From positions 124,001-188,000 of the IMG/VR virus record IMGVR_UViG_3300032236_002285: a stretch of 64,000 bases of DNA; one strand, written 5' to 3'. A model generated the notes under the pieces. It saw only the letters and a program-made list of their open reading frames with translations. It made no database searches and was not told where the DNA came from. The translations under genes were made by a program, and so were the position numbers. Positions 177 through 62,586 of this stretch are shown piece by piece. Within the stretch, counting starts at the first letter, position 1. Each line of letters begins with the position of its first letter.

Positions 177-1073
177 TTAAAATCCAAAACACTTTGATAT
201 ATTCTTATAATGCTTAACTTTTCCGTGATGATGGAATAGTTTAATATGTGGGAATTTAATTTTAATTCTGTGATATTCTTGAGATTTAACATCCTTACTT
301 AAATAGTAAGTTTTTGATTCTTCCGGTGATATTTTTTTAATAGTATTAGATTTAATTACTACATCATTCTCTAAGTAAATAATTTTTACAGTTACAAATC
401 TTGCTGATGGATCTTGTTTTCCTTGTCCCATTTCAAAAAGATGTGCAGTATCAATTAAGCTATCATCAATACCTTCATTCTCAATGATGTATTTTGAAAT
501 AGATTCACATCTTGCTTTAGCTAAACCTTTATTATTTGGTTCGTAACCTTTTGCTTTAAGTTCGTTTTGTAGTTTTATTGACAAACCTTGTTTATCAGTT
601 GATGATTGAATTTGAATACCAATGATTGTATGGTTACTTGATTCAATATTATTAATTACTTGTGAAACACTATCAGCCATTTCAGGTGAAATAGTATAAA
701 CGCCAGAAGCAAAATATTGATTATCGCCAAAAATAATCTTTTCACCTTTTATAACTGTTTCAGGTGCTGTTTCTGTCAATTCTTTAAAAAGTGTATCAAC
801 AACTGTTGAGTCTAAGTTATAACCTTTTTTTTGTAATCTTTCTAATGATTTTTCATCAGTTACTTTTTTATGTAAAGTTTTTGTAACTTCTTTACCAGGC
901 CACTTAACCTCGATGCCACTTTTGTTTACTTTTATAGGTCCAGGTCCACTTGGTGATGCCTTCATTTGACCGGGTAATAATGAACCAGCAGCTATAGCAG
1001 TACCTAAAAGAGCATCTTTCCAACCCTCTTCCTCATTGATTTGAAATTCATCAAATTTTTTAATATTCTTCAT
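177..1073 (-). CDS. OmpA/MotB-like peptidoglycan-binding domain protein with capsid-targeting-like N-terminus
   Basis: N-term MKNIKKFDEFQINEEE, hydrophobic LLGTAIAAGSLL; C-half YFASG...SSTD...NKGLAKARCESISKYI...SARFVTVKI matches the OmpA C-terminal pattern. Confidence 0.6.
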   Translation of the reverse strand: MKNIKKFDEFQINEEEGWKDALLGTAIAAGSLLPGQMKASPSGPGPIKVNKSGIEVKWPGKEVTKTLHKKVTDEKSLERLQKKGYNLDSTVVDTLFKELTETAPETVIKGEKIIFGDNQYFASGVYTISPEMADSVSQVINNIESSNHTIIGIQIQSSTDKQGLSIKLQNELKAKGYEPNNKGLAKARCESISKYIIENEGIDDSLIDTAHLFEMGQGKQDPSARFVTVKIIYLENDVVIKSNTIKKISPEESKTYYLSKDVKSQEYHRIKIKFPHIKLFHHHGKVKHYKNISKCFGF

Positions 1074-1906: not shown

Positions 1907-2779
1907 TTAGAAACAAGAAAGATATTTTTCTCCTCTATCACATAATATAGTAATGATATTACCTTCCATATCTGGGTATTTTTCTAACAATCTTTCTGAT
2001 GCTAAAATATTAGCACCTGAACTAATACCAACAAATAAACCTTGTTCTTTAGCTAATCTTCTAGCTCTTTCTTTAGCATCTTCTGTTGAAATAACCATAA
2101 TATCATCTACTTGTGTTAAATCAACTAAGAATTTAGAACCATCACCAATTCCTTGAATTCCGTGAAGACCTGGTTCACCACCAGACATAACAGGTGATTC
2201 TGCTGGTTCAACGGCTACTACTTTCATACCTGAGTGATACCATTTTAAAACACGAGAAGTACCCATAAGAGTACCTCCAGTTCCTGTTCCATCCACAAAT
2301 GCCGCAATTTTATTAGTATGTTGATGTAGGATTTCCACAGCAGTTCCTTTTTCATGTGCTTCAATATTCAAAGGGTTGTGAAATTGATTAGGATTAAAGT
2401 AACCATTTTCTTGAGCCATTTTATTTCTTAAAGCAATTGCTGCATCAAATTGACCATCTTCTACTTCGATTAGTTCAGCTCCATATAATCTTAACATTTG
2501 TTTTCTCTCATTGCTCATATTAGAAGGCATAACAATTATACATTTATAACCTCTTTCTGCTGCTAAGAAGGCAAAAGCAATTCCAGAGTTTCCTGATGTT
2601 GCTTCAATGATAGTATCACCTTTTTTAATTAAACCATTTTTTTCAGCGTGATTTATTATGTAAGAAGCCATTCTATCTTTTATCGAACCGCTTGGGTTTT
2701 GACCTTCAAACTTTGCGAAGATTCTTTCAGATATTTTAATTAAAGGAGTTTGACCAACGGTTTTAGATAGATTTGACAT
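1907..2779 (-). CDS. cysK: cysteine synthase (O-acetylserine sulfhydrylase, PLP)
   Basis: SGSIKDR PLP lysine, ATSGNSG, GTGGT, GIQGIG, GISSGAN motifs; start moved to ATG 2779 (MSNLSK) because an AATATATA motif lies at 2803-2810. Confidence 0.93.
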   Translation of the reverse strand: MSNLSKTVGQTPLIKISERIFAKFEGQNPSGSIKDRMASYIINHAEKNGLIKKGDTIIEATSGNSGIAFAFLAAERGYKCIIVMPSNMSNERKQMLRLYGAELIEVEDGQFDAAIALRNKMAQENGYFNPNQFHNPLNIEAHEKGTAVEILHQHTNKIAAFVDGTGTGGTLMGTSRVLKWYHSGMKVVAVEPAESPVMSGGEPGLHGIQGIGDGSKFLVDLTQVDDIMVISTEDAKERARRLAKEQGLFVGISSGANILASERLLEKYPDMEGNIITILCDRGEKYLSCF

Positions 2780-2838
2780 ATTATAGTTGTTTTTTTGTAT
2801 TTTATATATTAGTGACATGTAAGTTTATTTGAAAAAAA

Positions 2839-5882: not shown

Positions 5883-6280
5883 TAATAAGCTTTGATTTTG
5901 ATGGAACTTTAGTAGATGAGTTTGGTGGTCACCCATCAAATAGTCAAAAAGAAGAAATTCAAGGACTCGCTAAGAAGTATATTAGTTTAGGACATGAAGT
6001 AATTATTATTACTAAACGATTTGGTCCAGAAAATGCAGATAAAGGTATCAAAAATGAACATTTAGAAGTTCAACATCTGGCTAATAAGTTGGGTATTCAA
6101 AAGGTTTACTTTACTAATCGTGAAATGAAATTTTCATATATTATTAACTTGAAAGTTGATAGACATTTTGAAAATGATGATTATGAGGTTTCTTTAATTA
6201 ATCAGGTTTGTAAAGAAAAAGGCCACAACTGTTTAGTTGTTCCGGTAGAAGACCCTTATTGGAGAGATTTAATATATTAA
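5879..6280 (+). CDS. HAD-superfamily phosphatase-like
   Basis: SFDFDGTL motif I, IIITKR motif II, HFEND. Confidence 0.7.
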   Translation: MIISFDFDGTLVDEFGGHPSNSQKEEIQGLAKKYISLGHEVIIITKRFGPENADKGIKNEHLEVQHLANKLGIQKVYFTNREMKFSYIINLKVDRHFENDDYEVSLINQVCKEKGHNCLVVPVEDPYWRDLIY

Positions 6281-28267: not shown

Positions 28268-30181
28268 ATGATTTTTAGTTACAATACATTTTTGAGACCG
28301 GTAACACCAACTGATAATAATATTCAAATATTAGATAATAATGGTGTTGTTGTTTATACAATAAACCCATTTTCTATAGGAACTACAAGAGTTTCAAATA
28401 ATGTTTTAGAAATATCTTTTAAAAGTGGTAAAACAATACCTCTTCAATTTTCTTCTCAAAATGAAGCTAAAGTGGCTTTAAGTTTACTTCAGTCACAAAT
28501 TGATATACTTTTAACAAAGACTCCAACCGTTATTGATACTCAAATTAAAAACTACATTGAATATGTAGTTAGTTTAAGTAGCTCTTCTGGTACATCAGGT
28601 AGCTCAGGTTCAAGTGGTTCTTCAGGTGTTGATGGTACATTTTATGGTTCGTCAGGCTCTTCCGGTATTAATGGTACTTCAGGTATTAATGGTACTTCAG
28701 GAGTTAATGGCACCTCTGGTCATAATGGTACCTCAGGTGCTAACGGTACATCGGGATCTGATGGTACATCCGGACACAATGGGTTAAATGGTAGCTCAGG
28801 TACATCGGGGACATCAGGCATTTCTGATATTTTACATGGTACATCTTCTACTTATCTTTCGGTTCCAGATGTTGAAGAGTTTGTATTTTTAACAACACAA
28901 CCTGGTTTAGGTTTTTCAACAAATCAAACAGTTGTTGTTTTTGATGATGTTAATGGTTACGCTAACTATTATTATATTGATGGTGATGATACTTTAGGTA
29001 TATTTTATGGTTATATTGACTCTTATGATCAGCAAACAGGTGACATGAGTATTTACACAGCTTTATCTTTTAATGTTGGTTCAACATCAAGTAATTGGGG
29101 TATCAATTTAGCTGGTATACCTGGATCGAGTGGTTCAACTGGTGTATCTGGTACATCTGGTTCAAGTGGCACATCTGGTCACTCTGGTACTTCTGGTTCA
29201 AGTGGATCATCAGGGACTTCTGGTTTAAATGGCTCTTCGGGTACATCTGGATCAAGTAGCACATCTGGATCAAGCGGCACATCGGGTAGCTCAGGATCAA
29301 GTGGGTCAAGCGGATCATCAGGAACTACATCAACTGGTCCTCAAAACTATACTCAAGTTTTAGGATCAAAAGTAACTGGTGTAACAACCACAGGCGTCAC
29401 TCTTGTTTCTGGTAGTATTACTACAAATGGTGGACCTGTTAGTATTACAGCTACTGGTGATGCAAACCCTCAAGGTGGCACAGCTTGGGTAAGATTGCAA
29501 ATATACAGAAATAGCACACCAGTTGGTCAAATAATACAAGCTGAGAATGGTTCAAATTTAAATATACCTTATTGTGTTACATTTATTGATACACCAAGTG
29601 CAGGTACTTATACCTATTCAATGAGAACTGTTAGTGGTATAGCTGGAACATTGGACTTTGGTGAAGTTAATGGTCCAACACTAACTATGATTGAATTAAC
29701 GGGTTCTGGTACATCTGGATCATCAGGTTCTGCTGGTACATCAGGTAGTTCGGGTACTTCACCATCAACAGATTTAACATTAAGTGGAAATTTAGTTGTT
29801 AATGGTCAATCAACATTTACAGAGGTAACAGAGGTTATCAATCAAATACCAGCTGGTGCTACTGCTTCAACTGTTACATATGATTTCAGTAATGGTGATA
29901 TTTGGTATCATGGAACAGCTTCTCAAAACTTTACAGCTAATTTTATAAATGTACCTACTACAACTTGGAGAACAATTACTACTACAATTTTAATTAATCA
30001 AGGTCCTACTGCTTATATACCAACTACTGTAAAAATAAATGGTACTGCTTCTACTGTAAAATGGGCAGGTGGAACTGCTTCAGGTACAGCTAATGGAGTT
30101 GATATAATTGGATTTAGTTTTATCTATACAAATAGTGGTATTCCTACTCAAGTGTTAGGTCAAATAAATTCATTTAGTTAA
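28268..30181 (+). CDS. tail fibre-like protein with Gly-X-Y (SGT/SGS/NGT) repeats
   Basis: Three tracts of SGTSGSSG / NGTSG triplet repeats separated by globular domains. Confidence 0.7.
   Translation: MIFSYNTFLRPVTPTDNNIQILDNNGVVVYTINPFSIGTTRVSNNVLEISFKSGKTIPLQFSSQNEAKVALSLLQSQIDILLTKTPTVIDTQIKNYIEYVVSLSSSSGTSGSSGSSGSSGVDGTFYGSSGSSGINGTSGINGTSGVNGTSGHNGTSGANGTSGSDGTSGHNGLNGSSGTSGTSGISDILHGTSSTYLSVPDVEEFVFLTTQPGLGFSTNQTVVVFDDVNGYANYYYIDGDDTLGIFYGYIDSYDQQTGDMSIYTALSFNVGSTSSNWGINLAGIPGSSGSTGVSGTSGSSGTSGHSGTSGSSGSSGTSGLNGSSGTSGSSSTSGSSGTSGSSGSSGSSGSSGTTSTGPQNYTQVLGSKVTGVTTTGVTLVSGSITTNGGPVSITATGDANPQGGTAWVRLQIYRNSTPVGQIIQAENGSNLNIPYCVTFIDTPSAGTYTYSMRTVSGIAGTLDFGEVNGPTLTMIELTGSGTSGSSGSAGTSGSSGTSPSTDLTLSGNLVVNGQSTFTEVTEVINQIPAGATASTVTYDFSNGDIWYHGTASQNFTANFINVPTTTWRTITTTILINQGPTAYIPTTVKINGTASTVKWAGGTASGTANGVDIIGFSFIYTNSGIPTQVLGQINSFS
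28585..28820 (+). repeat. coding Gly-Ser-Thr triplet repeat tract 1 (tracts 2 and 3 at about 29120-29330 and 29705-29765)
   Basis: Degenerate 9/18-nt units such as AATGGTACTTCAGGT. Confidence 0.85.
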
Positions 30182-30182
30182 T

Positions 30183-32267
30183 ATGATATCAAGAATTAGT
30201 AACTTTTCAGGACCTTTATCACCAGCTTTTAGAATACTAGTTGGTGGATTTACAACTGATGGATTAATTTTAAGATATGAAATATCTGATAATAATTCAT
30301 ATTCAGGTACTAATATTATTACCGACTTAGCTTTTAATAGTAATGCCACATTATATAATGGTCCAACATATTCTATAAACGGCTACATAAATTTTGATGG
30401 TGCTAATGATTATTTACTTACAAACACATCACTCAATTCTAAATTATCACCGATTAATACATCATCTATAATATCACATTTTATTTGGATTTATCCAACT
30501 GATAATGGTGTTATTGTTTCTGAACAAGGAAATCCACCATTAAATTCAGGTTGGCATGATTCTCAAATTGAAATAGTTGCTGGAAATTTAAAATTTGGAT
30601 TATGGCAATCTCCTGGTGGTGTATCAAGTCTAAACTCATCAATTACAACTCCATTTTATAATTGGTATTATGTTGGTCTTACTTATGATGGTGCTATAAT
30701 GAGAGGTTATGTAAATGGTCAATTTGCTGGTTCTAAATCGGTTTCAAGGTGGACACCATATAATAACGGAGGAGGTGTTGGATTAAACTATGCTATTGCT
30801 GCTAATGATGTTACAAGTTTAGGTGATGGTAGTCCAGCTAAAATGAAGTTAGGTGCTTTTCATGTTTATAACACAGCTCTTAGTCAGCAACAAGTTCTTA
30901 ATAATTACAATTATACTAAATCTGATTATATTTATACTGGTAGTATGTCTATTTGGCTTGATGCTAATGATCCAGAAAGTTTCTCAGGTGGTTTAGTTAA
31001 TGATTTAAGTGGTAATAATTATACACATACTCTAACATCAGGTGCTACTTCATCTACAATATTTGGTTTTAAATCTTTTGACTGTACCACTGGACTTAAA
31101 AGAATTGAAGTTAATGGTACAGGACCTACACTACCAACAACTGGATATACATATGTTGTATGGGCACGACTTATAAGTGATAATTTCTCATCATATAGAA
31201 CTTTACTTTATACAAACATATCAGGTGATAAATATACACCAATTACTGTTCCCAATGGGACAAATACATTAGGATGGTGGGATAGAAGCGCCGGTCAGTT
31301 CAGATCTTCTGGGTATGGTCTAACATCTTCTGTTGATGTTTGGGTCCAATATGCTGTTGTTGGTGATAGTTCTTCACAAACATACTATATAAATGATACA
31401 CAAGTAGGAAACTCAGTTCCTTACGGTATTAGTGGCACAACTACACATTGGGGATTAGGTAATAATGCTATAGCTGGTCAACCTTTTGGTTATGTTGGAA
31501 ATATGATGTTTTATAGTAAGAAACTAGCACTGAGTGAGATTAAACAAAACTATGATGCCTTAAAGCATGTTTATGTTAATGGAAATTTTGTAATTAATAA
31601 TTTAAGACTTTATTTTAATCCAGATAGTTATTTAAGTTATCCAGGCTCTGGAACAACTGTTAATGATTTAAGTGGAAATTCATTAAATGGTACAATTTCA
31701 AATATTACTTTTAATAAATCATATTTTACATTTAATGGTTCTAATTCACAAATTGCTATTGCTGATAATGCTTTATTAGAGTCCGGCTCAGGAGATTGGA
31801 CTATGGAGTCTTGGTTTAATACTAACACCAGTTCCGGAAGTCAAGTTGTTTTAGGTAAATTTAGTGGAGGTAACTCATCTGATGTTTCTTATTCTATAAG
31901 AATTAGTGGTACATCATTATTCTCTCAAATTGGTAATGGATTGGGTGGTACATTAAATGTAAACTATGCTAATTCTACATCTTATACAATAAATACCAAT
32001 ACATGGTATCAAATTGTTTACGTTTATTCAAATAGTACTGATACTTTCAAAACTTATATAAACGGTAGTTTGATAGGTTCTATTTCTTGTACTATTGGTA
32101 ACCTACTTAATAACTCAGCAAATTTATACATAGGTTCATTTAATAATGGTCAGTTTGCTCAATATTTTAGTGGTCAAATTGGTATAGTAAGATTATATAG
32201 CTCTGCTTTAAGTGATTCTGATGTTTCTAAAAACTTTGAAGCAAGTAGAAGTATCTATAGTATTTAA
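30183..32267 (+). CDS. tail protein with three LamG/concanavalin-A-like domains
   Basis: Three repeats of L...D...SY.G.G..V.DLSGN...; FDGANDY; WY.V..TY...YVNG; Y..ALS..EI.QNY. Confidence 0.8.
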   Translation: MISRISNFSGPLSPAFRILVGGFTTDGLILRYEISDNNSYSGTNIITDLAFNSNATLYNGPTYSINGYINFDGANDYLLTNTSLNSKLSPINTSSIISHFIWIYPTDNGVIVSEQGNPPLNSGWHDSQIEIVAGNLKFGLWQSPGGVSSLNSSITTPFYNWYYVGLTYDGAIMRGYVNGQFAGSKSVSRWTPYNNGGGVGLNYAIAANDVTSLGDGSPAKMKLGAFHVYNTALSQQQVLNNYNYTKSDYIYTGSMSIWLDANDPESFSGGLVNDLSGNNYTHTLTSGATSSTIFGFKSFDCTTGLKRIEVNGTGPTLPTTGYTYVVWARLISDNFSSYRTLLYTNISGDKYTPITVPNGTNTLGWWDRSAGQFRSSGYGLTSSVDVWVQYAVVGDSSSQTYYINDTQVGNSVPYGISGTTTHWGLGNNAIAGQPFGYVGNMMFYSKKLALSEIKQNYDALKHVYVNGNFVINNLRLYFNPDSYLSYPGSGTTVNDLSGNSLNGTISNITFNKSYFTFNGSNSQIAIADNALLESGSGDWTMESWFNTNTSSGSQVVLGKFSGGNSSDVSYSIRISGTSLFSQIGNGLGGTLNVNYANSTSYTINTNTWYQIVYVYSNSTDTFKTYINGSLIGSISCTIGNLLNNSANLYIGSFNNGQFAQYFSGQIGIVRLYSSALSDSDVSKNFEASRSIYSI

Positions 32268-41734: not shown

Positions 41735-41779
41735 ACTAATAAAAAAAAATTTTCTATAACAAGAAAAGTTTTTTTGTTT

Positions 41780-42214
41780 ATGGAAAAACCAAGTAAAGAA
41801 GATATAATGAAAAAATGGGCTCCTGTTTTAGAGTCTATGGGTATGACTGGATCTCAATTGGATAATTTATCACAACTAACCGAAAATCAACCAAATCAAA
41901 TATTAGAAGAAACTAAAACTGAAGAGTTTCCAAGTTTATTACCAATAGCTATGAGGGTAGCCGCTAGAACAATATCAAATGATTTAATATTTGCTTCACA
42001 AGAAGAAATTGACCAAGTTAAAAAGAAAGTTCAATCTGAAAATCGTGATGGTAAGATTGAAGCCATTATAGAAGATAAAGAATTTACTGAGAAGAAATTA
42101 GAAGATGATGAAGAGTATAAGGAATTGATGAAAAAAGGTGTTAAACCTATGTCGGCACCTTCAGGAACTTTATTCTATTTAGATTATAAGTATGGAGGAG
42201 ACAAAGATGAGTAA
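41780..42214 (+). CDS. mini protein resembling the N-terminal part of a T4 gp23-type major capsid protein
   Basis: KEDIMKKWAPVLESMG, LLPIAMRVAARTI, KPMSAPSGTLFYLDYKYG; about 144 aa; internal RDGKIEAII helix. Confidence 0.7.
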   Translation: MEKPSKEDIMKKWAPVLESMGMTGSQLDNLSQLTENQPNQILEETKTEEFPSLLPIAMRVAARTISNDLIFASQEEIDQVKKKVQSENRDGKIEAIIEDKEFTEKKLEDDEEYKELMKKGVKPMSAPSGTLFYLDYKYGGDKDE

Positions 42215-42392
42215 ATATGTAAGTCCTGGAGTTTATATTAAAGAAACTGATTGGAGTGGTATTTATCCAGTATTTCAAAGAAATCTTTTAAGAAAGAATA
42301 AAATAGCTAAAATCTTTGGTTTAGATGTTAGATCGCTTATTATAACTTCAACTCCAAAAGGTCCAAATAATTTTCCAATTATTGCTTGGTGA
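42207..42392 (+). CDS. 61-aa chimera: tail-sheath N-terminal motif, RKNKIAKIF helix, terminase motif-III-like segment
   Basis: MSKYVSPGVYIKETD...LRKNKIAKIFG...LIITSTPKGPNNF; ATG 42207 overlaps upstream stop (ATGAGTAA). Confidence 0.7.
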   Translation: MSKYVSPGVYIKETDWSGIYPVFQRNLLRKNKIAKIFGLDVRSLIITSTPKGPNNFPIIAW

Positions 42393-42421: not shown

Positions 42422-42754
42422 ATGATTACCGTTTATCTTATATGTGCTGAATTTGACGGCACAAGATTATTTAAAATAGGACATACTCGTAGAAGAGTAG
42501 AAGAAAGAATGAAAGAGTTTAGAACGGGAAATGGCTCTGATCTTTATATAGTCAATCAGTTTAAATCTAAATGGGGCACTAAAATAGAAGCTCAACTTCA
42601 TAGAAGATTCAATTCAAAAAAAGCTAATGGTGAGTGGTTCGCCTTAGATGATGATGATGTGATGGAATTTAAACCTTATTGTGAACTAGCACATAATAAC
42701 TTTGAATTAATAACTACACAAAATAGTTGGTACTTAGAAAGAGGTAAATTCTAA
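42422..42754 (+). CDS. GIY-YIG-related T5orf172/MUG113-like protein
   Basis: VYLI...FKIGHT...EERMKEFRTGN...E.QLHRRF...GEWF. Confidence 0.8.
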   Translation: MITVYLICAEFDGTRLFKIGHTRRRVEERMKEFRTGNGSDLYIVNQFKSKWGTKIEAQLHRRFNSKKANGEWFALDDDDVMEFKPYCELAHNNFELITTQNSWYLERGKF

Positions 42755-42794: not shown

Positions 42795-43061
42795 ATGGGT
42801 TCAATGAAAGAAATAGCAATTAGAGATTATATTTCTAAAATAGACTTCAAGCACGATGATTGGAAGCTTTCTCAATTAAAAGAAGACATGCGTAGATTCT
42901 TAGGTGAAGAACCAGGAATTGAAGTTGTTTATAAAAAAGATGTAATGGTGAATGAAGTATCCGGAGAATCTAAAGAATTCTTAGATATTGATAAAATTCA
43001 AATTGTATTCACTGATACAGATGACAGATTTAAAAAAATAGAATTTACATTAGGTGTTTAA
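42795..43061 (+). CDS. hypothetical protein
   Basis: 88 aa, AATATATA 42770-42777 upstream. Confidence 0.75.
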   Translation: MGSMKEIAIRDYISKIDFKHDDWKLSQLKEDMRRFLGEEPGIEVVYKKDVMVNEVSGESKEFLDIDKIQIVFTDTDDRFKKIEFTLGV

Positions 43062-43284
43062 TATGAATTTTGAAAATTACTACTTAGATATACAAAAAAT
43101 ATCTCAAATACCTTCACTTGAAGATAGGGACCAAATACATAGATACTATATGGATATGCTTATTTTTTTTACTGATGGTTCTGGTAGAGAAAAAGTATCA
43201 CAATCAATTATGAAAACACTTATCAAATCTGGGTATTTAATTGATTCTCGTGATGAAAAATTAGGTGAATTGTTAAATGGATAA
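43054..43284 (+). CDS. hypothetical protein, C-terminal RDEKLGELL helix
   Basis: 76-aa ORF containing IFFTDGS. Confidence 0.65.
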   Translation: MFNMNFENYYLDIQKISQIPSLEDRDQIHRYYMDMLIFFTDGSGREKVSQSIMKTLIKSGYLIDSRDEKLGELLNG

Positions 43285-43630
43285 CCAAATAACCGCTGAT
43301 ATTATTGACTATCTAGGTAAATACGAGAATGGTGTTCTTGTTTTACTATCTATAAACTATAAAGATAACTTTACAGAAGGTACTATTTATTATTCTGATA
43401 AAGCATTGGCTTTAACCGTTGATGAGAGTATAGAAGAAGACTTAGGTATGCGAATTGAATTTTGGCCTGGCTATAGAGATTTACTAATCTCAATTCTTAG
43501 AAGAGTTGTACCTTATAATGAAATTATTAATCGTTTAGATGAGATTGATGTTTCTAAATACTCTGATGTTAATATAGAATCAAAAGAAGCTGAAGATGTA
43601 AACGAAGACGATATTAAGAAGTCAGAATAA
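43277..43630 (+). CDS. acidic hypothetical protein
   Basis: 117 aa, start overlaps upstream stop. Confidence 0.7.
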   Translation: MDNQITADIIDYLGKYENGVLVLLSINYKDNFTEGTIYYSDKALALTVDESIEEDLGMRIEFWPGYRDLLISILRRVVPYNEIINRLDEIDVSKYSDVNIESKEAEDVNEDDIKKSE

Positions 43631-43675
43631 ACTATTTTTGATTATTTTGATATAAATAAAAAATAATCATTATGA

Positions 43676-45424
43676 ATGTTAATTAGTGAATTAGGAATTA
43701 GAGGATTCAAGTCTTATGGCAATAACGAACAAGTATTAAAATTAAACACAGAAAAAGGAGAATTAATTCTCCTTGTTGGAAATAATGGAGCTGGTAAATC
43801 ATCTCTTTTAGATTCCTTCGATTACACACTTTATGGTAAAGTTAGAGGTCGTAAAAAGAAATGGGCCACTTTATCAACACTTCCAAACAGAATTAACGGT
43901 GAATTACTTAATAGAATTAAATTTAATTCTTTAGGTACCGACGTTGAAATCAAACGTGGTATTTCACCAAGCGTATTAGAACTCATTGAAAATGGAGTAA
44001 CCAATGAAAGAGCTGGTAAAGGAAACATTGATGAAAAGATTGAAAAGTATATCGGTATGGATATTGAAACTTTCAAATCATTTATCTCAATGTCTATCAA
44101 TGACTTCAAAAACTTTATCTCTTTATCAAATGAAGAAAAACAACTTCTTTTAGACAAGTTATTTAACTTAGAAGTTATCAATATATTAAATGGTATCTTA
44201 AAAGATATTGCTAAGAGTAATAAAACCAAAGCCGCTTCTTTTGATGCTGAAATTAGAACTTTAGATGACTCTATAGCTTCTATTCAAAGGTCTATTGATA
44301 AAGCCATTGAAAGACAAAAAGAAGAAGCCAGACTAGCCTTAGAACGTGAAAAAGAAGATATTCAATCAGAGATTGATAGAATCACAAATGAGATGAATTC
44401 CAGAAAAGATGATTATAAGTCTTTGAAAGAAAAGATGGATAAAATCAAAGAAAAAGATTCTGAACTTTCTGATGAGATGGATAAAGAAAAAAGACAACTT
44501 ATCAACTGTCAGAATGATATTAAGAATGTTCAAAAAGAATTAGATTTGTATGATTCTGGTAAATGTCCAACTTGTAAAACAGATTTTGATTCAGTTCACT
44601 TTGCTAATTTAAGAACGGCTTTAGAAGAAAAGAAATTAGGCTTTGAAAATATCAAAGCTGAAATTGAAGCCAATGTTACTAAAGTAAGAGAAAGGCAAGC
44701 TAAGTTAAAATCTTTATCAGAAACTACAACAACTACTTTTAATGATTTAAGTTATTTATTGAAGAATTATAAATCAGAGATTGATAAATTAACTCAAAAG
44801 AAAGCTAGTCAAACTGCACCGGTTAATACTACACCTTCTGTCGATATTCAAGAGTTTAAAAATACAATTGATGAACTTGAAGAAAAGAAAGTCATCAGTA
44901 CTGATAAAATTACTGAGTGTAAAGAAAAAGATCTTTACTACAAAGAGTTAAATAGAATTTTTGGTGAAGATGGTGTTAAGAAATCTATCATTTCTGGTAT
45001 TATCAAACCAATCAATCACTTTATTGCTGAGAATATCAAAAAGATGGGTTTACCATTTGAAGTTAAGTTAGATGAGACTTTTACAGCTGAGATTAAACAA
45101 TTAGGTTCTCAAATTGAACACGATTCTTTATCAACTGGTGAAACTAAAAAAGTAAATATTAGTATCTTAATTGCTTACTTGAAATTGATTAGAACTAAAC
45201 GTCATATCAATATTCTCTTCTTAGACGAGGTTTTCTCATCTATTGATATAGAAGGTATAGATTCTATTTTAGCACTCTTAAAATCGTTTGCAAACGATTA
45301 TAACATCAATATCTTTGTTGTTCACCATGCTATTTTGAATCAAGAGATGTTTGATAGAATATTGAAGATTAACAAAGAAGTCTTTTCTTCAATAGAAGAA
45401 GTAAATCTTAACTATGGAAATTAA
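43676..45424 (+). CDS. SbcC/Rad50/gp46-like SMC ATPase
   Basis: GNNGAGKS Walker A, long coiled coil, CPTC zinc hook, LSTGE signature, LFLDE Walker B, VVHH. Confidence 0.92.
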   Translation: MLISELGIRGFKSYGNNEQVLKLNTEKGELILLVGNNGAGKSSLLDSFDYTLYGKVRGRKKKWATLSTLPNRINGELLNRIKFNSLGTDVEIKRGISPSVLELIENGVTNERAGKGNIDEKIEKYIGMDIETFKSFISMSINDFKNFISLSNEEKQLLLDKLFNLEVINILNGILKDIAKSNKTKAASFDAEIRTLDDSIASIQRSIDKAIERQKEEARLALEREKEDIQSEIDRITNEMNSRKDDYKSLKEKMDKIKEKDSELSDEMDKEKRQLINCQNDIKNVQKELDLYDSGKCPTCKTDFDSVHFANLRTALEEKKLGFENIKAEIEANVTKVRERQAKLKSLSETTTTTFNDLSYLLKNYKSEIDKLTQKKASQTAPVNTTPSVDIQEFKNTIDELEEKKVISTDKITECKEKDLYYKELNRIFGEDGVKKSIISGIIKPINHFIAENIKKMGLPFEVKLDETFTAEIKQLGSQIEHDSLSTGETKKVNISILIAYLKLIRTKRHINILFLDEVFSSIDIEGIDSILALLKSFANDYNINIFVVHHAILNQEMFDRILKINKEVFSSIEEVNLNYGN

Positions 45425-45744: not shown

Positions 45745-47154
45745 TTAGCAGTCGTAACAATCTACTGTTCCTCTACCACTACAATTATCACATTCTACTG
45801 TACCATCTCCGTTACATTCTGGACAATCTGTTTCATTTCCCTCTTCATCTTCAATGTGACCTAATCCTTCACAATTTGAACAATCAACACTTCCATCTCC
45901 ACCACAATCGTCACATTCCATTCTACCCGTTCCGCCGCAAGTATCACAAGGTCTAACATAGTCACCACCTGTATCTTCTAAGAAATAACAACCACCAGTA
46001 TCTTCACTTGAAATAGTTTTTTTACGAGGATTGAAATATTTAAGTGTATCTAAGTAAGGGAAATTATCCATACTAGCATCAGTTAAATTAACCGTTAAAT
46101 CTAAATTAACTCTACTTCCATCCGGTGCTACAGCTTGATTACTATCTGAACTATTATTATATTCTTTATAATACCAACCATTTTCTTTAGCATAATCTCT
46201 GAATAATTGAACATCTGAATCATTTACCGTATAAACTCTGTCTAAGAATTCTTTACCATCTCTTAACTTCCAAAGTAAAGCTCTACCAACAATTTTTTCA
46301 GTATCATCCATTGATTTGTAAATAACTAAACCAACTTCTGGATTAGCAGTGTAAACTTCTAACCAACTATCTGGAGCACCAGCCATACAAGACGAACCTA
46401 AAGTCCCACTTCTTTGATAATAATTTGAGTTATGATACCAGTGAGCAATATCAGAACCCCTAACAACTTCAAAGTAAGAGAATTTATCATTCATCTTATC
46501 AATAGTAGCTTTATATAAATTTACAAATTGTTCAAAATCTCTATCAGCAAATGTAGTAATACCAGCAGCTCTTAAAAGTGCTCTCATAGCTCTACCTACT
46601 TTTACTTCTTGTCTGTTTGTTGACCAAACTTTTTTAATTCTCTCATCAACAGCTCTTATCTTTTCAACATTATAAACACCTTGACCAACATCATTACCTG
46701 ATTGGTCTTTGAATTTAACCCAAGCATAAGTTTTACCTGATTGTTCAGATGTTACTCTAGCAATAACCTCACCTAAATCTGTAGATTGTGGTTTATAAGG
46801 CTCAGAGCCTTCTTCAAATGTATAACCTAGTTGAGTAAATAATTTTGCATTTGAATCTTTGTGTTTTAACCAACCACCACCAGAACCGATAAATCTAACT
46901 ACTTCTTTAGTATCACCTAAAATCTCTTGAGCTTTTCTATCAGGAGTAAAAGTAATTGTATCGTTTTTTGTGAACTCAATATCAAGGTAATTAGCTTGAA
47001 CATTGTAGTCATTATTTTCAGCATCTAAAATAGCTTTCGCTACAGGGCTGTCAATCTTAGTCATTGCTTTTCTGAAGTTATCGGAATAAACAACATTAGA
47101 TTCTAGAATAAATTCTAGGTTTTCGTTTATAAAATCTGAATATTTTTTAATCAT
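45745..47154 (-). CDS. SCM/RALLW/PYLDT family protein with capsid-targeting-like N-terminus and C-terminal CxxCxGxG zinc finger
   Basis: MIKKYSDFINE; LGSSCM, GRALLW, FLDRVY, FPYLDT; six CxxC units at C-terminus. Confidence 0.8.
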   Translation of the reverse strand: MIKKYSDFINENLEFILESNVVYSDNFRKAMTKIDSPVAKAILDAENNDYNVQANYLDIEFTKNDTITFTPDRKAQEILGDTKEVVRFIGSGGGWLKHKDSNAKLFTQLGYTFEEGSEPYKPQSTDLGEVIARVTSEQSGKTYAWVKFKDQSGNDVGQGVYNVEKIRAVDERIKKVWSTNRQEVKVGRAMRALLRAAGITTFADRDFEQFVNLYKATIDKMNDKFSYFEVVRGSDIAHWYHNSNYYQRSGTLGSSCMAGAPDSWLEVYTANPEVGLVIYKSMDDTEKIVGRALLWKLRDGKEFLDRVYTVNDSDVQLFRDYAKENGWYYKEYNNSSDSNQAVAPDGSRVNLDLTVNLTDASMDNFPYLDTLKYFNPRKKTISSEDTGGCYFLEDTGGDYVRPCDTCGGTGRMECDDCGGDGSVDCSNCEGLGHIEDEEGNETDCPECNGDGTVECDNCSGRGTVDCYDC

Positions 47155-47184
47155 TTTCAACTATGTTATATTTTAAGATATAAG

Positions 47185-61476: not shown

Positions 61477-62586
61477 TTATTTTTTAAATTCTTTTTTATC
61501 ATTAGAAACATAAAAGTTATCAAAGTTGTAATATTTTTTATAGACTTCTTTAATCTTTTTCATATTAACATCATCTAGGATATCATAAACTGACCAACCT
61601 TCTGGATTAATATATTGATTAACATTCTTATATCTAAGAATCTCGTCTTTTTCCATTCTTACTTTATAATAATCTTTAACAAGATTGAATCTTTCTTTTG
61701 TTAAATACTTATCAGGATTTGTAATTACCTCTTTAACTGAATCAACTACACCATTAAAGTTTTTGTTAGAAGTTTGAGTTGAAATAGTATTAATACCTTG
61801 ATTATTAACTCTTGATAAATAACAATGTACATAATAAACTAAGCCTCTTTTTTCTCTAATTTCTTGATAAAGAGGAGATTTTAATCCTAATGATAACATA
61901 GCATTAATAAAGTGAACATAAGCAAAATCCTCTTCAATTATTGGAGAAAGAATAGCAATAGATGTTTTATCTTTGAATTCATTACTTAATTCCAAATCAA
62001 CATCATGATTTCCAAATTCTAAAGTTTTCTTAATTTCTCTTTTAGCAAAATCAATAGTGTTGTTTTTATAAGGCTTGTTCTTAGAAACATTAATGATTTT
62101 TGTTGGCTTAGCATATTGAAGTTCAAAAAAGTTCAAACAATCCATATACTTTAAGTTTTCCAAATCTTCTTTCAATCCAATTGGGTCAAAGTCACCAAAT
62201 AATTTACGAGAAAGATTTAACATATGTGTTTGAGTTTGGTCATTAAAACAATCCATATACTCTTCAAGTACGATATTTCTTTCATTCTCAAATTGTTCCT
62301 TAGTAACATTAAATTCACCAAGTAAGTCCATAAACTCACCTTTCCACTTATTTACTTTTTCATCTAAACCTGTTAGATAGAAAACGATTTCATTTGAACT
62401 CGTGTAAGCATTCCAATCAATACCATCTTTATCAAAATCTTCTTGAAGATGATCAAAGTTTTTACACATTAAATGTTCCATTAAATGGCTAATACCATAC
62501 CAACCTTTTTTCTCAAGGTTTGTTGAACCTTCATAAACTACATAAAAACCAGAAAGGTCTGTTTGAGATTTTAAATTTATTATCAT
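61477..62586 (-). CDS. M16 family zinc peptidase
   Basis: GISHLMEHL (HxxEH), NAYTS, ERNIVLEEY, LYQEIREKRGLVY. Confidence 0.92.
   Translation of the reverse strand: MIINLKSQTDLSGFYVVYEGSTNLEKKGWYGISHLMEHLMCKNFDHLQEDFDKDGIDWNAYTSSNEIVFYLTGLDEKVNKWKGEFMDLLGEFNVTKEQFENERNIVLEEYMDCFNDQTQTHMLNLSRKLFGDFDPIGLKEDLENLKYMDCLNFFELQYAKPTKIINVSKNKPYKNNTIDFAKREIKKTLEFGNHDVDLELSNEFKDKTSIAILSPIIEEDFAYVHFINAMLSLGLKSPLYQEIREKRGLVYYVHCYLSRVNNQGINTISTQTSNKNFNGVVDSVKEVITNPDKYLTKERFNLVKDYYKVRMEKDEILRYKNVNQYINPEGWSVYDILDDVNMKKIKEVYKKYYNFDNFYVSNDKKEFKK

What the first reader, a model, noticed from the sequence alone, without database searches (positions are those of the whole stretch)
41780..42214. Miniature major-capsid-like protein with a helix inserted between two gp23 motifs
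KEDIMKKWAPVLESMG parallels T4 gp23 KAELLNKWKPLLEGEG, and KPMSAPSGTLFYLDYKYG parallels gp23 QPMNSPTGQVFALRAVYG (both T4 strings recalled from memory). The ORF stops right after the second motif, about 144 aa versus 400-500 aa for a true capsid protein. An insert containing RDGKIEAII splits LLPIAMRVAARTI from the PM motif. It could be a capsid decoy, a prohead-protease substrate decoy, or a head-assembly modulator.
Basis: partly seen in the sequence, partly recalled or inferred. Interest (0 to 1): 0.8.

Follow-up and report, generated by a model that had tools for sequence, protein, structure and literature searches.

The report
Mini capsid-protein paralogue of huge phages
A huge freshwater phage carries a conserved 144-residue gene that copies only the first quarter of its own major capsid protein, with an acidic helix spliced in. 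It is a real, selected gene family rather than a broken capsid gene, and it probably acts by imitating the capsid protein's N-terminal arm.

Summary
ORF 41780-42214 (+) encodes 144 aa that are homologous to the N-terminal ~130 residues of the gp23-type major capsid protein (MCP) of this huge-phage clade (hhalign 99.7 %, E 2.6e-26). A 47-residue helical insert splits the MCP motif.

It is not a truncated or misassembled MCP:
- The short ORF is kept in hundreds of relatives (738 proteins; 627 clusters at 50 % identity).
- It is under purifying selection (dN/dS 0.11-0.25 at dS above 0.5).
- It is unchanged in an independent assembly.
- It lies about 90 kb from the true 560-aa MCP gene in a related complete genome.
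- No further MCP sequence exists in the window.

New findings:
- The "insert" is the best-conserved part. It is a separate module that elsewhere is fused to other MCP or scaffold fragments.
- The N half resembles the clade's own MCP, while the C-terminal strand motif resembles other T4-like MCPs more.
- The overlapping next ORF (42207-42392) looks like a similarly built mini copy of the tail-sheath N-terminus.

Function is untested. The best guess is a trans-acting mimic of the MCP N-terminal arm that works in head assembly. The main rival is a Gol-like EF-Tu binder or defence decoy.

The parts
41780..42214 (+). mini-MCP gene: 144 aa plus a TAA stop; acidic (pI 4.7, net charge about -10)
   Evidence: ORF. 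Family of 738 proteins and 627 representative clusters. hhalign to the clade MCP gives 99.7 %, E 2.6e-26. dN/dS is 0.11-0.25 at dS above 0.5. Identical in the source contig, and without indels in an independent sample's contig. Charge.
41780..41935 (+). residues 1-52: propeptide-like N part (KKW.P.LE.MG ... TENQ), equivalent to the cleaved 65-residue N-terminal piece of T4 gp23
   Evidence: Aligns to T4 gp23 2-63 and to clade MCP residues from 6 onward. Scores higher against the clade's own MCP than against other T4-like MCPs. Missing in a subfamily of about 90-130 aa.
41936..41995 (+). residues 53-72: N-arm helix (LLPIAMRVAARTISNDLI), equivalent to T4 gp23 ~95-112, i.e. the Gol region
   Evidence: T-even gp23 95-119. 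AF2 helix 53-68. P55 is nearly invariant.
41996..42133 (+). residues 73-118: inserted acidic helical module (core ENRDGKIEAIIE..F.E.K.ED..EY); the most conserved part of the family
   Evidence: Unaligned to the MCP. Invariant N88 R89 K92 I93 E98 E104. AF2 pLDDT 83-94, helix 74-98. The same module is fused to other capsid or scaffold fragments in L027 and P0355.
42134..42211 (+). residues 119-144: strand motif V.PM.APSG.LFYLDY.YG, equivalent to T4 gp23 VQPMNSPTGQVF...
   Evidence: Pfam Gp23 and PHROG 138 hits at residues 120-143. 63-68 % identical to the MCPs of LR756508 and Flavobacterium phage immuto over 19 aa. Closer to other T4-like MCPs than to the clade's own.
42207..42392 (+). overlapping downstream ORF, 61 aa, basic (pI 10.1): candidate mini tail sheath (SPGVY.KE.D, an inserted basic stretch, then IITSTPKGP.NFP)
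   Evidence: Its start overlaps the mini-MCP stop. Conserved in 10 related loci. hhalign to the N-terminus of the true sheath of LR745206 gives 78.6 %, E 1.7e-5. In shuffle tests the best matches in the whole 1295-aa sheath are residues 5-23 and 31-48.
41740..41779 (+). A/T-rich hairpin followed by a T run, directly upstream of the start codon; terminator-like, loop TATAACAA
   Evidence: Conserved position with differing stem sequences in L001, L002, L015 and L016. Folding z-scores -2.8 to -4.1. Missed by the G+C-based terminator scan.

Best explanation
Shown: the gene encodes a stand-alone paralogue of the first ~130 residues of the clade's own gp23-type major capsid protein. These are the propeptide-like segment, the N-arm helix and the first strand after it. 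A conserved 46-47-residue acidic helical module is inserted. None of the HK97-fold body is present, so the protein cannot build capsomers. It is a selected gene family.

Inferred: because it keeps exactly the part of the MCP that in T4 faces the prohead interior and later forms inter-subunit arms, it most likely works in trans by occupying the partners of that part.
- The clade-specific N half would dock on the scaffold/protease core.
- The arm helix plus strand would dock on MCP subunits.
- The acidic module would act as the effector or spacer.

The expected outcome is control of head assembly: keeping MCP from polymerising off-pathway, capping or seeding the lattice, or entering the prohead core as a minor, possibly cleaved, component. 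The basic mini-sheath encoded by the overlapping next ORF would do the same for the tail sheath.
For: Identity:
- hhalign of the mini family against the MCP family gives 99.7 %, E 2.6e-26.
- The mini protein of LR745206 matches its own genome's MCP N-terminus at 41 % identity, E 3.5e-19.

Real gene:
- 738 homologues of 143-169 aa and 627 clusters at 50 % identity, the top 150 all short.
- dN/dS 0.11-0.25.
- No indel in an independent assembly, and a relative's copy is present in an RNA library.
- MCP and mini co-occur in LR745206, LR756502 and IMGVR_UViG_3300045921_000484.

Mechanism (indirect):
- The N half and arm helix score much higher against the clade's own MCP than against other T4-like MCPs, as expected if both bind the same clade-specific partner.
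- In T4 the N-terminal regions of gp23 lie inside the prohead and form N-arms on expansion. The core is contacted by regions lining the capsid interior (PMC9958956).
- Long propeptides target proteins into giant-phage proheads (PMC5694885).
- AF2 gives an elongated helical protein without a compact fold (pTM 0.39) but with a confident module helix, like scaffold-type proteins. The protein is strongly acidic.
- The module is also fused to an MCP spine-helix fragment, an MCP C-terminal fragment and scaffold-like repeats, which ties it to head-assembly parts.
Against: - No direct evidence of binding, of presence in proheads or virions, or of timing.
- The gene sits in the replication/recombination region (SbcC-like, T5orf172, clamp, DNA polymerase neighbours). 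In LR745206 it is ~90 kb from the protease-scaffold-MCP genes, and it lacks the ATATATA-type motif seen upstream of those structural genes.
- A subfamily lacks the propeptide-like N part, so scaffold docking cannot be the core function.
- The C-terminal strand motif is more like other phages' MCPs than the clade's own, which fits a non-self target better.
- No similarity to T-even gp22, gp68 or Inh.
- No clear conserved L/I-x-E protease site.
Confidence: 0.4

Rival explanations
1. Host-directed mimic. The protein is a stand-alone Gol-like segment that binds host EF-Tu (or another host factor or sensor that recognises the most conserved MCP motif). It would either tune translation or act as a decoy that blocks a Lit-type or other abortive-infection sensor before the real MCP accumulates. 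The mini-sheath would be a second decoy.
For: - The arm helix plus PM motif is the homologue of T4 gp23 92-119.
- The review PMC3014915 states that a 29-residue Gol region of gp23 binds EF-Tu domains II/III. It also states that the first quarter of gp23 binds more stably, and that this is the most conserved gp23 region.
- The mini protein is that first quarter.
- The gene lies among replication/recombination genes rather than late structural genes.
- It keeps the generic T4-like strand motif rather than the clade's own.
- It is made only of the most conserved MCP motifs.
- Structural proteins are known defence triggers (PMC13728456).
Against: - No evidence of EF-Tu binding; similarity to the T-even Gol region itself is weak (E 8e-4, probability 25 %).
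- The exact Gol residue range (93-122) is from memory.
- The N half tracks the clade's own MCP, which a host-directed decoy need not do.
- A free Gol-like peptide could as well trigger as block a Lit-type protease.
- No sheath sensor is known to me.
Confidence: 0.25
2. Inter-phage interference. The mini-MCP and mini-sheath are dominant-negative arm mimics aimed at co-infecting T4-like phages. The clade's own MCP and sheath have diverged at the mimicked motifs and so escape.
For: - The C-terminal motif scores 58-83 against other T4-like MCPs and only 28-47 against the clade's own MCP.
- The mini-sheath has the generic SPGVY motif, while the clade's sheath starts RPGIFIEEFD.
Against: - The N half and arm helix are clade-like, not generic.
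- The L014 member has the clade-like strand motif.
- An ancestral motif retained after an old duplication explains the pattern more simply.
- No experimental precedent known to me.
Confidence: 0.08
3. Functionless remnant. It is a fragment of an MCP gene carried along with the neighbouring T5orf172/GIY-YIG-type mobile endonuclease gene and is now decaying.
For: - A T5orf172/MUG113 gene lies 200 bp downstream and is syntenic in L001, L002, L015 and L016.
- L027 has a GIY-YIG gene splitting a DNA polymerase nearby.
Against: - dN/dS 0.11-0.25 at dS above 0.5.
- Hundreds of divergent intact copies of constant length, with invariant residues.
- In L014 the gene occurs without the endonuclease.
- The insert is more conserved than the MCP-like parts.
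Confidence: 0.02
4. Artefact. A frameshift or misassembly has cut a full-length MCP gene.
For: None found.
Against: - tblastn of four MCPs against the window finds only 41795-41989 and 42140-42196.
- The downstream ORFs are unrelated to the MCP.
- The source contig is identical, and an independent sample's contig (about 96 % identical) has no indel in the ORF.
- All relatives keep a stop at the same place.
- Related genomes have a separate complete MCP.
Confidence: 0.01

Closest known systems
N-terminal region of T4-type major capsid protein gp23 (65-residue propeptide, N-fist/N-arm, Gol region)
   Same: Collinear motifs: KKW.P.LE, ENQ, the arm helix, V.PM and PSG..F.L...YG. Homology to the clade's gp23-type MCP was shown. 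This is the same part of the protein that in T4 lies inside the prohead and is cleaved or rearranged (PMC9958956).
   Different: It is a separate gene of 144 aa without the A, P and I domains. It carries a 47-residue inserted acidic helix and is encoded far from the head genes. Cleavage by the prohead protease is not shown.
T4 gp24 (vertex protein), the classical MCP paralogue
   Same: A duplicated MCP gene kept alongside the MCP for a specialised role.
   Different: gp24 is full length and has the HK97 fold, forming pentamers. The mini protein keeps only about a quarter of the MCP and cannot.
T4 Gol peptide of gp23 (partner of EF-Tu and trigger of the Lit protease)
   Same: The arm helix plus PM motif is the homologous segment. 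The literature says that the first quarter of gp23 is the stable EF-Tu binder (PMC3014915).
   Different: Gol is part of the MCP and is not a separate gene. Binding of the mini protein to EF-Tu is untested, and an insert follows directly after the Gol-equivalent segment.
Small proteins that redirect or assist capsid assembly by imitating or binding assembly parts (SaPI CpmB, P4 Sid; T4 capsid-targeting sequences of internal proteins). Named from my own knowledge.
   Same: Short, mostly helical proteins that act through the contact surfaces of capsid or scaffold proteins. Targeting is by an N-terminal peptide shared with head proteins.
   Different: No sequence relation was tested or expected. 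Those are satellite-encoded or are cargo proteins, whereas this one is encoded by the phage itself and derives from its MCP.
Scaffold / prohead core proteins (T4 gp22, gp67, gp68)
   Same: Acidic, helical, no compact fold predicted.
   Different: No sequence similarity to T-even gp22 or gp68. The gene is not next to the protease gene.

Membership tests
gp23-type major capsid protein (Pfam PF07068, HK97 fold) | Sequence homology to the family | tested here: met
   hhalign against clade MCPs gives 99.7 %, E 2.6e-26, but only over MCP residues 6-129. PHROG 138 gives E 6e-5.
gp23-type major capsid protein (Pfam PF07068, HK97 fold) | Reaches the Pfam gathering score | tested here: not met
   13.6 bits against a cut-off of 24.4. 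The best family member reaches E 6e-4, still below the cut-off.
gp23-type major capsid protein (Pfam PF07068, HK97 fold) | Complete HK97-fold body (E-loop, P domain with spine helix, A domain), about 450-650 aa | tested here: not met
   144 aa. AF2 gives helices only and no compact fold. True MCPs of the clade are 548-584 aa.
gp23-type major capsid protein (Pfam PF07068, HK97 fold) | Gene next to the prohead protease and scaffold genes | tested here: not met
   The true MCP of LR745206 follows a protease-scaffold ORF. The mini gene lies ~90 kb away beside SbcC-like and T5orf172 genes.
Gol-type EF-Tu-binding segment of gp23 | Homologous to the Gol segment of gp23 | tested here: met
   Profile positions 56-83 align to gp23 92-119. 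T-even gp23 95-119 is the only aligned stretch (weak, E 8e-4).
Gol-type EF-Tu-binding segment of gp23 | Binds EF-Tu domains II/III and enables Lit cleavage | not testable with these tools
   Needs a binding or cleavage assay, or a complex prediction.
Prohead core / scaffold proteins (gp22, gp67, gp68 type) | Sequence similarity to known core proteins | tested here: not met
   hhalign probability 0.1 % against T-even gp68 and gp22. Inh also gives 0.1 %.
Prohead core / scaffold proteins (gp22, gp67, gp68 type) | Present in proheads and cleaved by the prohead protease | not testable with these tools
   No proteomics are available. I-x-E-like sites exist (ILE at residues 41-43, IIE at 96-98), but P3 is not conserved across the family.
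Pseudogene or fragment left by a mobile endonuclease | Relaxed selection, variable truncation points | tested here: not met
   dN/dS 0.11-0.25. Constant architecture across 121 diverse members.

The most novel reading that the evidence does not exclude
The mini-MCP and the overlapping mini-sheath may form a coupled pair of 'arm mimics' of the two most abundant virion proteins. The acidic NRD-helix module may mark a wider family of small proteins. Each member would display one conserved motif of a head-assembly protein: the MCP arm, the MCP spine helix, the MCP C-terminal strand, or a scaffold repeat. Such a system could be one of two things. It could be a set of decoys against host sensors, or rival phages, that recognise conserved virion motifs. 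Or it could be a set of polymerisation caps that stop polyhead and polysheath formation while very large capsids and tails are built.
Probability: 0.2. Interest if true: 0.85.

Novelty: new variant of a known kind. Interest (0 to 1): 0.62.

Why it matters
Huge phages (relatives here are the 635-kb and 642-kb genomes) must build very large heads and long tails, and almost nothing is known about how. A widespread, selected small protein made from the capsid protein's own interaction arm is a concrete, testable candidate for an assembly regulator. Alternatively it could be the first stand-alone version of the Gol/EF-Tu-binding segment, whose normal role in T4 has been an open question for decades. 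The modular reuse of one acidic helix with different capsid and scaffold fragments, and a matching mini tail sheath next door, suggest a general strategy of self-mimicry that has not, to my knowledge, been described.

Tried and rejected
- Foldseek with the better AF2 model found nothing in PDB and nothing below E 1 in BFVD. The model has no compact fold, so this says little.
- The first AF2 run, with 25 sequences, was poor (pLDDT 59).
- Pfam and PHROGs gave nothing for the insert. A YabG peptidase hit (E 0.002, 2 of 25 members) was judged to be chance.
- The idea that the MCP gene is split by the T5orf172 gene, with its C-terminal part downstream, was rejected. No MCP-like sequence lies elsewhere in the window.
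- Recent gene conversion between the mini gene and the MCP was rejected. Mini proteins are no closer to their own genome's MCP than to other clade MCPs.
- Similarity to T-even gp22, gp68 and Inh was rejected.
- The MCP of the window's own contig could not be retrieved. Two scans of viral contigs returned other contigs, so the comparison rests on relatives.
- Two look-ups of distant members landed on 1.5-kb contigs without context.
- A resemblance between the module core (NRDGKI) and the NRN.RIY motif at the start of the prohead protease is only 4-5 residues and not significant (E 1.1). It is not used.
- Promoter-class assignment was inconclusive. The ATATATA[CG]T motif precedes both structural genes and many other genes.

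Full report
**1. What is there**

The window is AT-rich (29 % G+C). It corresponds to part of IMG/VR contig IMGVR_UViG_3300032236_002285 (476 kb); the ORF lies at contig positions 165780-166211. ORF 41780-42214 (+) starts with ATG, ends with TAA and encodes 144 aa.

Its nearest database relatives at DNA or protein level are two uncultured huge phages, LR745206 (634,780 bp) and LR756502 (642,428 bp). By their lengths these are the 634-kb and 642-kb genomes of the Mahaphage clade, predicted to infect Bacteroidetes (PMC7162821). That identification is an inference from length.

Runs that hold the sequence are mostly freshwater metagenomes.

**2.

Library profiles give only weak hits:
- PHROG 138 'major head protein', E 6e-5, and Pfam Gp23, E 0.045, both at residues 120-143.
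- 15 of 25 family members touch Pfam Gp23, all below the gathering score.
- A family profile finds T4 gp23 as the top PDB sequence (E 0.088). Profile 2-60 aligns on gp23 2-63 and profile 56-83 on gp23 92-119.

The strong evidence comes from the clade's own MCP. I located that gene in LR745206 by fetching the genome in pieces and running tblastn. It is L011 8752-10434, 560 aa, preceded by a 707-aa ORF with a weak Peptidase_S77 match and acidic 14-residue repeats, that is, a protease-scaffold gene.
- The mini protein of LR745206 matches the N-terminus of that MCP at 41 % identity, E 3.5e-19.
- A profile-profile comparison of the mini family (A1) with an MCP alignment (A2) gives 99.7 % probability, E 2.6e-26. 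It covers MCP residues 6-129 and leaves 47 residues of the mini protein unaligned between the V.P(M) and P.G..(F/L)Y.D motifs.
- The ESM Atlas neighbours also carry Gp23.

**3. It is not a broken capsid gene**

- tblastn with four different MCPs finds nothing else MCP-like in the 64-kb window.
- The syntenic genes of LR745206 and LR756502 are 157 and 165 aa and stop at the same place. So do twelve IMG/VR loci.
- The source sample's contig is identical. A contig from another sample (about 96 % identical) has no indel inside the ORF.
- A contig from a metatranscriptome library covers 41794-41954 of a relative's copy. This is suggestive of transcription but not proof.
- Pairwise dN/dS among close relatives is 0.11-0.25 at dS above 0.5.
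- Complete MCP genes coexist with the mini gene in LR745206, in LR756502 (P0121 and P0438 both lie on the 642,428-bp record) and in IMGVR_UViG_3300045921_000484.

**4. Size and shape of the family**

The word-indexed search found 738 proteins, nearly all 143-169 aa, on contigs up to 817 kb. A second query found 172. The exhaustive profile search found 627 representative clusters at E no greater than 1e-3, of which 267 were at no more than 1e-10. The best 150 were all 76-236 aa.

In the 25-sequence alignment, the invariant residues are:
- K12 and W13;
- P55;
- N88, R89, K92, I93, E98 and E104;
- L131, Y133, D135 and Y138.

The inserted segment is therefore the most conserved part.

With 121 sequences AlphaFold gives pLDDT 83-94 for residues 71-110 (helix 74-98). 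Confidence is lower elsewhere, pTM is 0.39, and the model is helices without a compact fold.

The protein is acidic (pI 4.7, net charge about -10). It evolves faster than the MCP: 51.5 % against 76.5 % identity between the two huge genomes.

**5.

a. *Mosaic affinity.* The N part and arm helix score far higher against the clade's own MCP (60-143) than against other T4-like MCPs (20-72). The C-terminal strand motif instead scores higher against other T4-like MCPs (43-83) than against the clade's own (28-47), whose motif has changed to PGPKIDLLYIDFRYD. One member (L014) has the clade-like version.

b. *The N part is dispensable.* Many members of about 90-130 aa start at the arm helix.

c. *The insert is a module.* The 122-kb contig behind L027 has three small ORFs that carry it:
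   - One is fused to a segment like MCP residues 327-372, the spine-helix region (hhalign 91 %, E 1e-6), and its module matches at 94 %, E 1.3e-7.
   - One is a short mini-MCP.
   - One is fused to scaffold-like repeats (blastp E 1e-5 against the LR745206 scaffold).

   P0355 (236 aa) starts with a segment whose best match in the whole MCP is residues 477-501 (0 of 2000 shuffles reach it). It then has a module, an arm helix, a second module and the strand.

d. *Genomic context.* In the window, L001, L002, L015 and L016 the gene sits between two conserved unknown genes and a small ORF, a T5orf172/MUG113 gene and an SbcC-like (gp46-type) gene. In L027 it lies beside a clamp-like gene and a DNA polymerase split by a GIY-YIG gene; the clamp assignment is by eye. 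In L014 it lies beside a methyltransferase. It is never next to head genes.

e. *A partner.* The next ORF (42207-42392, 61 aa, pI 10.1) overlaps the stop codon and is conserved in ten loci.
   - Its first 20 residues best match residues 5-23 of the true 1295-aa sheath of LR745206 (0 of 2000 shuffles; hhalign 78.6 %, E 1.7e-5).
   - In one subtype its last 24 residues best match sheath residues 31-48 (2-14 of 2000 shuffles against the first 70 residues).
   - A basic stretch lies between the two.

   So it has the same build as the mini-MCP: two N-terminal motifs of a major structural protein split by an insert. Support for this is moderate.

**6. Mechanism**

Shown: the protein is the MCP's N-terminal quarter plus a helical module, and it cannot form a capsid shell.

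From the literature:
- In T4 this part of gp23 is the 65-residue cleaved propeptide plus the N-fist and N-arm. It lies inside the prohead, where the shell meets the core, and moves out on expansion to bind neighbouring subunits (PMC9958956).
- The segment around residues 92-122 is the Gol region. It binds EF-Tu and is the most conserved part of gp23, and the first quarter of gp23 binds more stably (PMC3014915).

Inferred: the mini protein acts in trans through the same contacts.

I rank a head-assembly role first (0.4), as chaperone, cap or core component. The reasons are that the N half tracks the clade's own MCP, the protein is scaffold-like, and the module recurs with other head-assembly fragments.

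A host-directed role comes second (0.25), as Gol-like EF-Tu binder or defence decoy. It is favoured by the location among replication genes, by the generic strand motif and by the dispensable N part.

Interference with rival phages (0.08), a decaying fragment (0.02) and an artefact (0.01) follow.

**7. Comparison and novelty**

The protein is homologous to gp23-type MCPs but fails the defining features of a capsid protein: length, fold, Pfam threshold and gene neighbourhood. It should be filed as an MCP-derived small protein, not as an MCP.

It shows no similarity to T-even gp22, gp68 or Inh.

Five full-text literature searches found no description of such a family. They cover open-access papers only, so this is not proof of novelty.

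I rate it a new variant of a known kind: a capsid-protein paralogue that is radically reduced and fitted with a new module.

**8. Limits**

- The MCP of the window's own genome was not recovered.
- Expression timing, binding partners and virion presence are unknown.
- The sheath resemblance rests on short motifs.
- The exact Gol residue numbers are from memory.

Noticed in passing
window 42207-42392 (+): 61-aa basic ORF that overlaps the mini-MCP stop. It starts like a tail sheath (SPGVY.KE.D) and ends with a second sheath-like motif (IITSTPKGP.NFP), with a basic stretch (RK.KI.KIFG) between them. A second subtype (L015, L023, L028) repeats the SPGV motif at both ends.
   Followed up: partly
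window 42422-42754 (+): 110-aa T5orf172/MUG113 (GIY-YIG-related) protein, Pfam E 2.6e-16. Syntenic in L001, L002, L015 and L016, but absent next to the mini gene in L014.
   Followed up: partly
window 41740-41779; L001 ~5965-6000; L015 ~5968-6000; L016 ~5964-6000: Conserved A/T hairpin plus T run immediately upstream of the mini-MCP start. The stems differ in sequence but keep pairing (z -2.8 to -4.1), and the loop holds TATAA(C/T)AA. It could be a terminator of the upstream gene, a promoter, or both.
   Followed up: partly
window 7066, 40438, 42409, 47191(-), 15694(-), 1901(-), 12524(-); L011 ~8705; L010 ~27990(-): Motif (A)ATATATA(C/G) recurs 4-13 nt upstream of many start codons in the window, and 35-45 nt upstream of the MCP, sheath and protease-scaffold genes of LR745206. 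It is possibly the phage's promoter element. The mini-MCP gene lacks it.
   Followed up: partly
L027 3842-4165, 4182-4511, 7326-7661: Three small ORFs on one 122-kb contig carry the same NRD.KID helix module. They are fused respectively to an MCP spine-helix-like segment, an MCP arm plus strand, and scaffold-like repeats.
   Followed up: partly
L027 5039-5803 (-) and 6005-7426 (+): A GIY-YIG homing-endonuclease-like gene sits directly upstream of an ORF that looks like the C-terminal part of a family-B DNA polymerase. This suggests a polymerase gene split by a mobile endonuclease (judged by eye only).
   Followed up: no
L011 6546-8669 (LR745206 198546-200669): 707-aa ORF upstream of the MCP. 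It combines a weak Peptidase_S77-like N-terminal domain with about ten tandem 14-residue acidic repeats (YSEYLAENLDKNI.) and an acidic tail: a fused protease-scaffold.
   Followed up: partly
P0355 ~98-122; L027 7664-7948; L001 6471-6725 (C-terminal part); L002 7056-7517: Another short motif (F.IP[IV]G..S...A.K....I..YK) recurs in small ORFs near the mini-MCP genes of several loci. Its origin is unknown.
   Followed up: no
window 43065-43287 and 43618-43739: Contigs of two other samples (X2, X4) lack 221 bases, which removes most of the 76-aa ORF 43054-43284. X2 has 895 other bases in place of 43618-43739, upstream of the SbcC-like gene. This is a variable region among close relatives.
   Followed up: no
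window 45745-47160 (-): 471-aa protein ending in a run of CxxCxGxG-type zinc-finger repeats like those of DnaJ. Related loci have DnaJ-domain genes a few kb downstream of the SbcC-like gene.
   Followed up: no
window 61477-62586 (-), 1907-2818 (-), 177-1073 (-), 28268-30181 (+), 30183-32267 (+): Other annotated genes of the window: an M16 peptidase, a PLP-dependent enzyme, an OmpA-family protein, a collagen-like tail-fibre protein and a virion structural protein. The four largest ORFs (1074-1715 aa) have no significant Pfam domain; the only hit is a sub-threshold pentapeptide repeat.
   Followed up: partly
L016 11402-11590; L014 3838-4002: Relatives encode a ribosomal protein S21 homologue and a short PCRF (release-factor) fragment near the mini-MCP locus. 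These are translation-related genes of huge phages.
   Followed up: no
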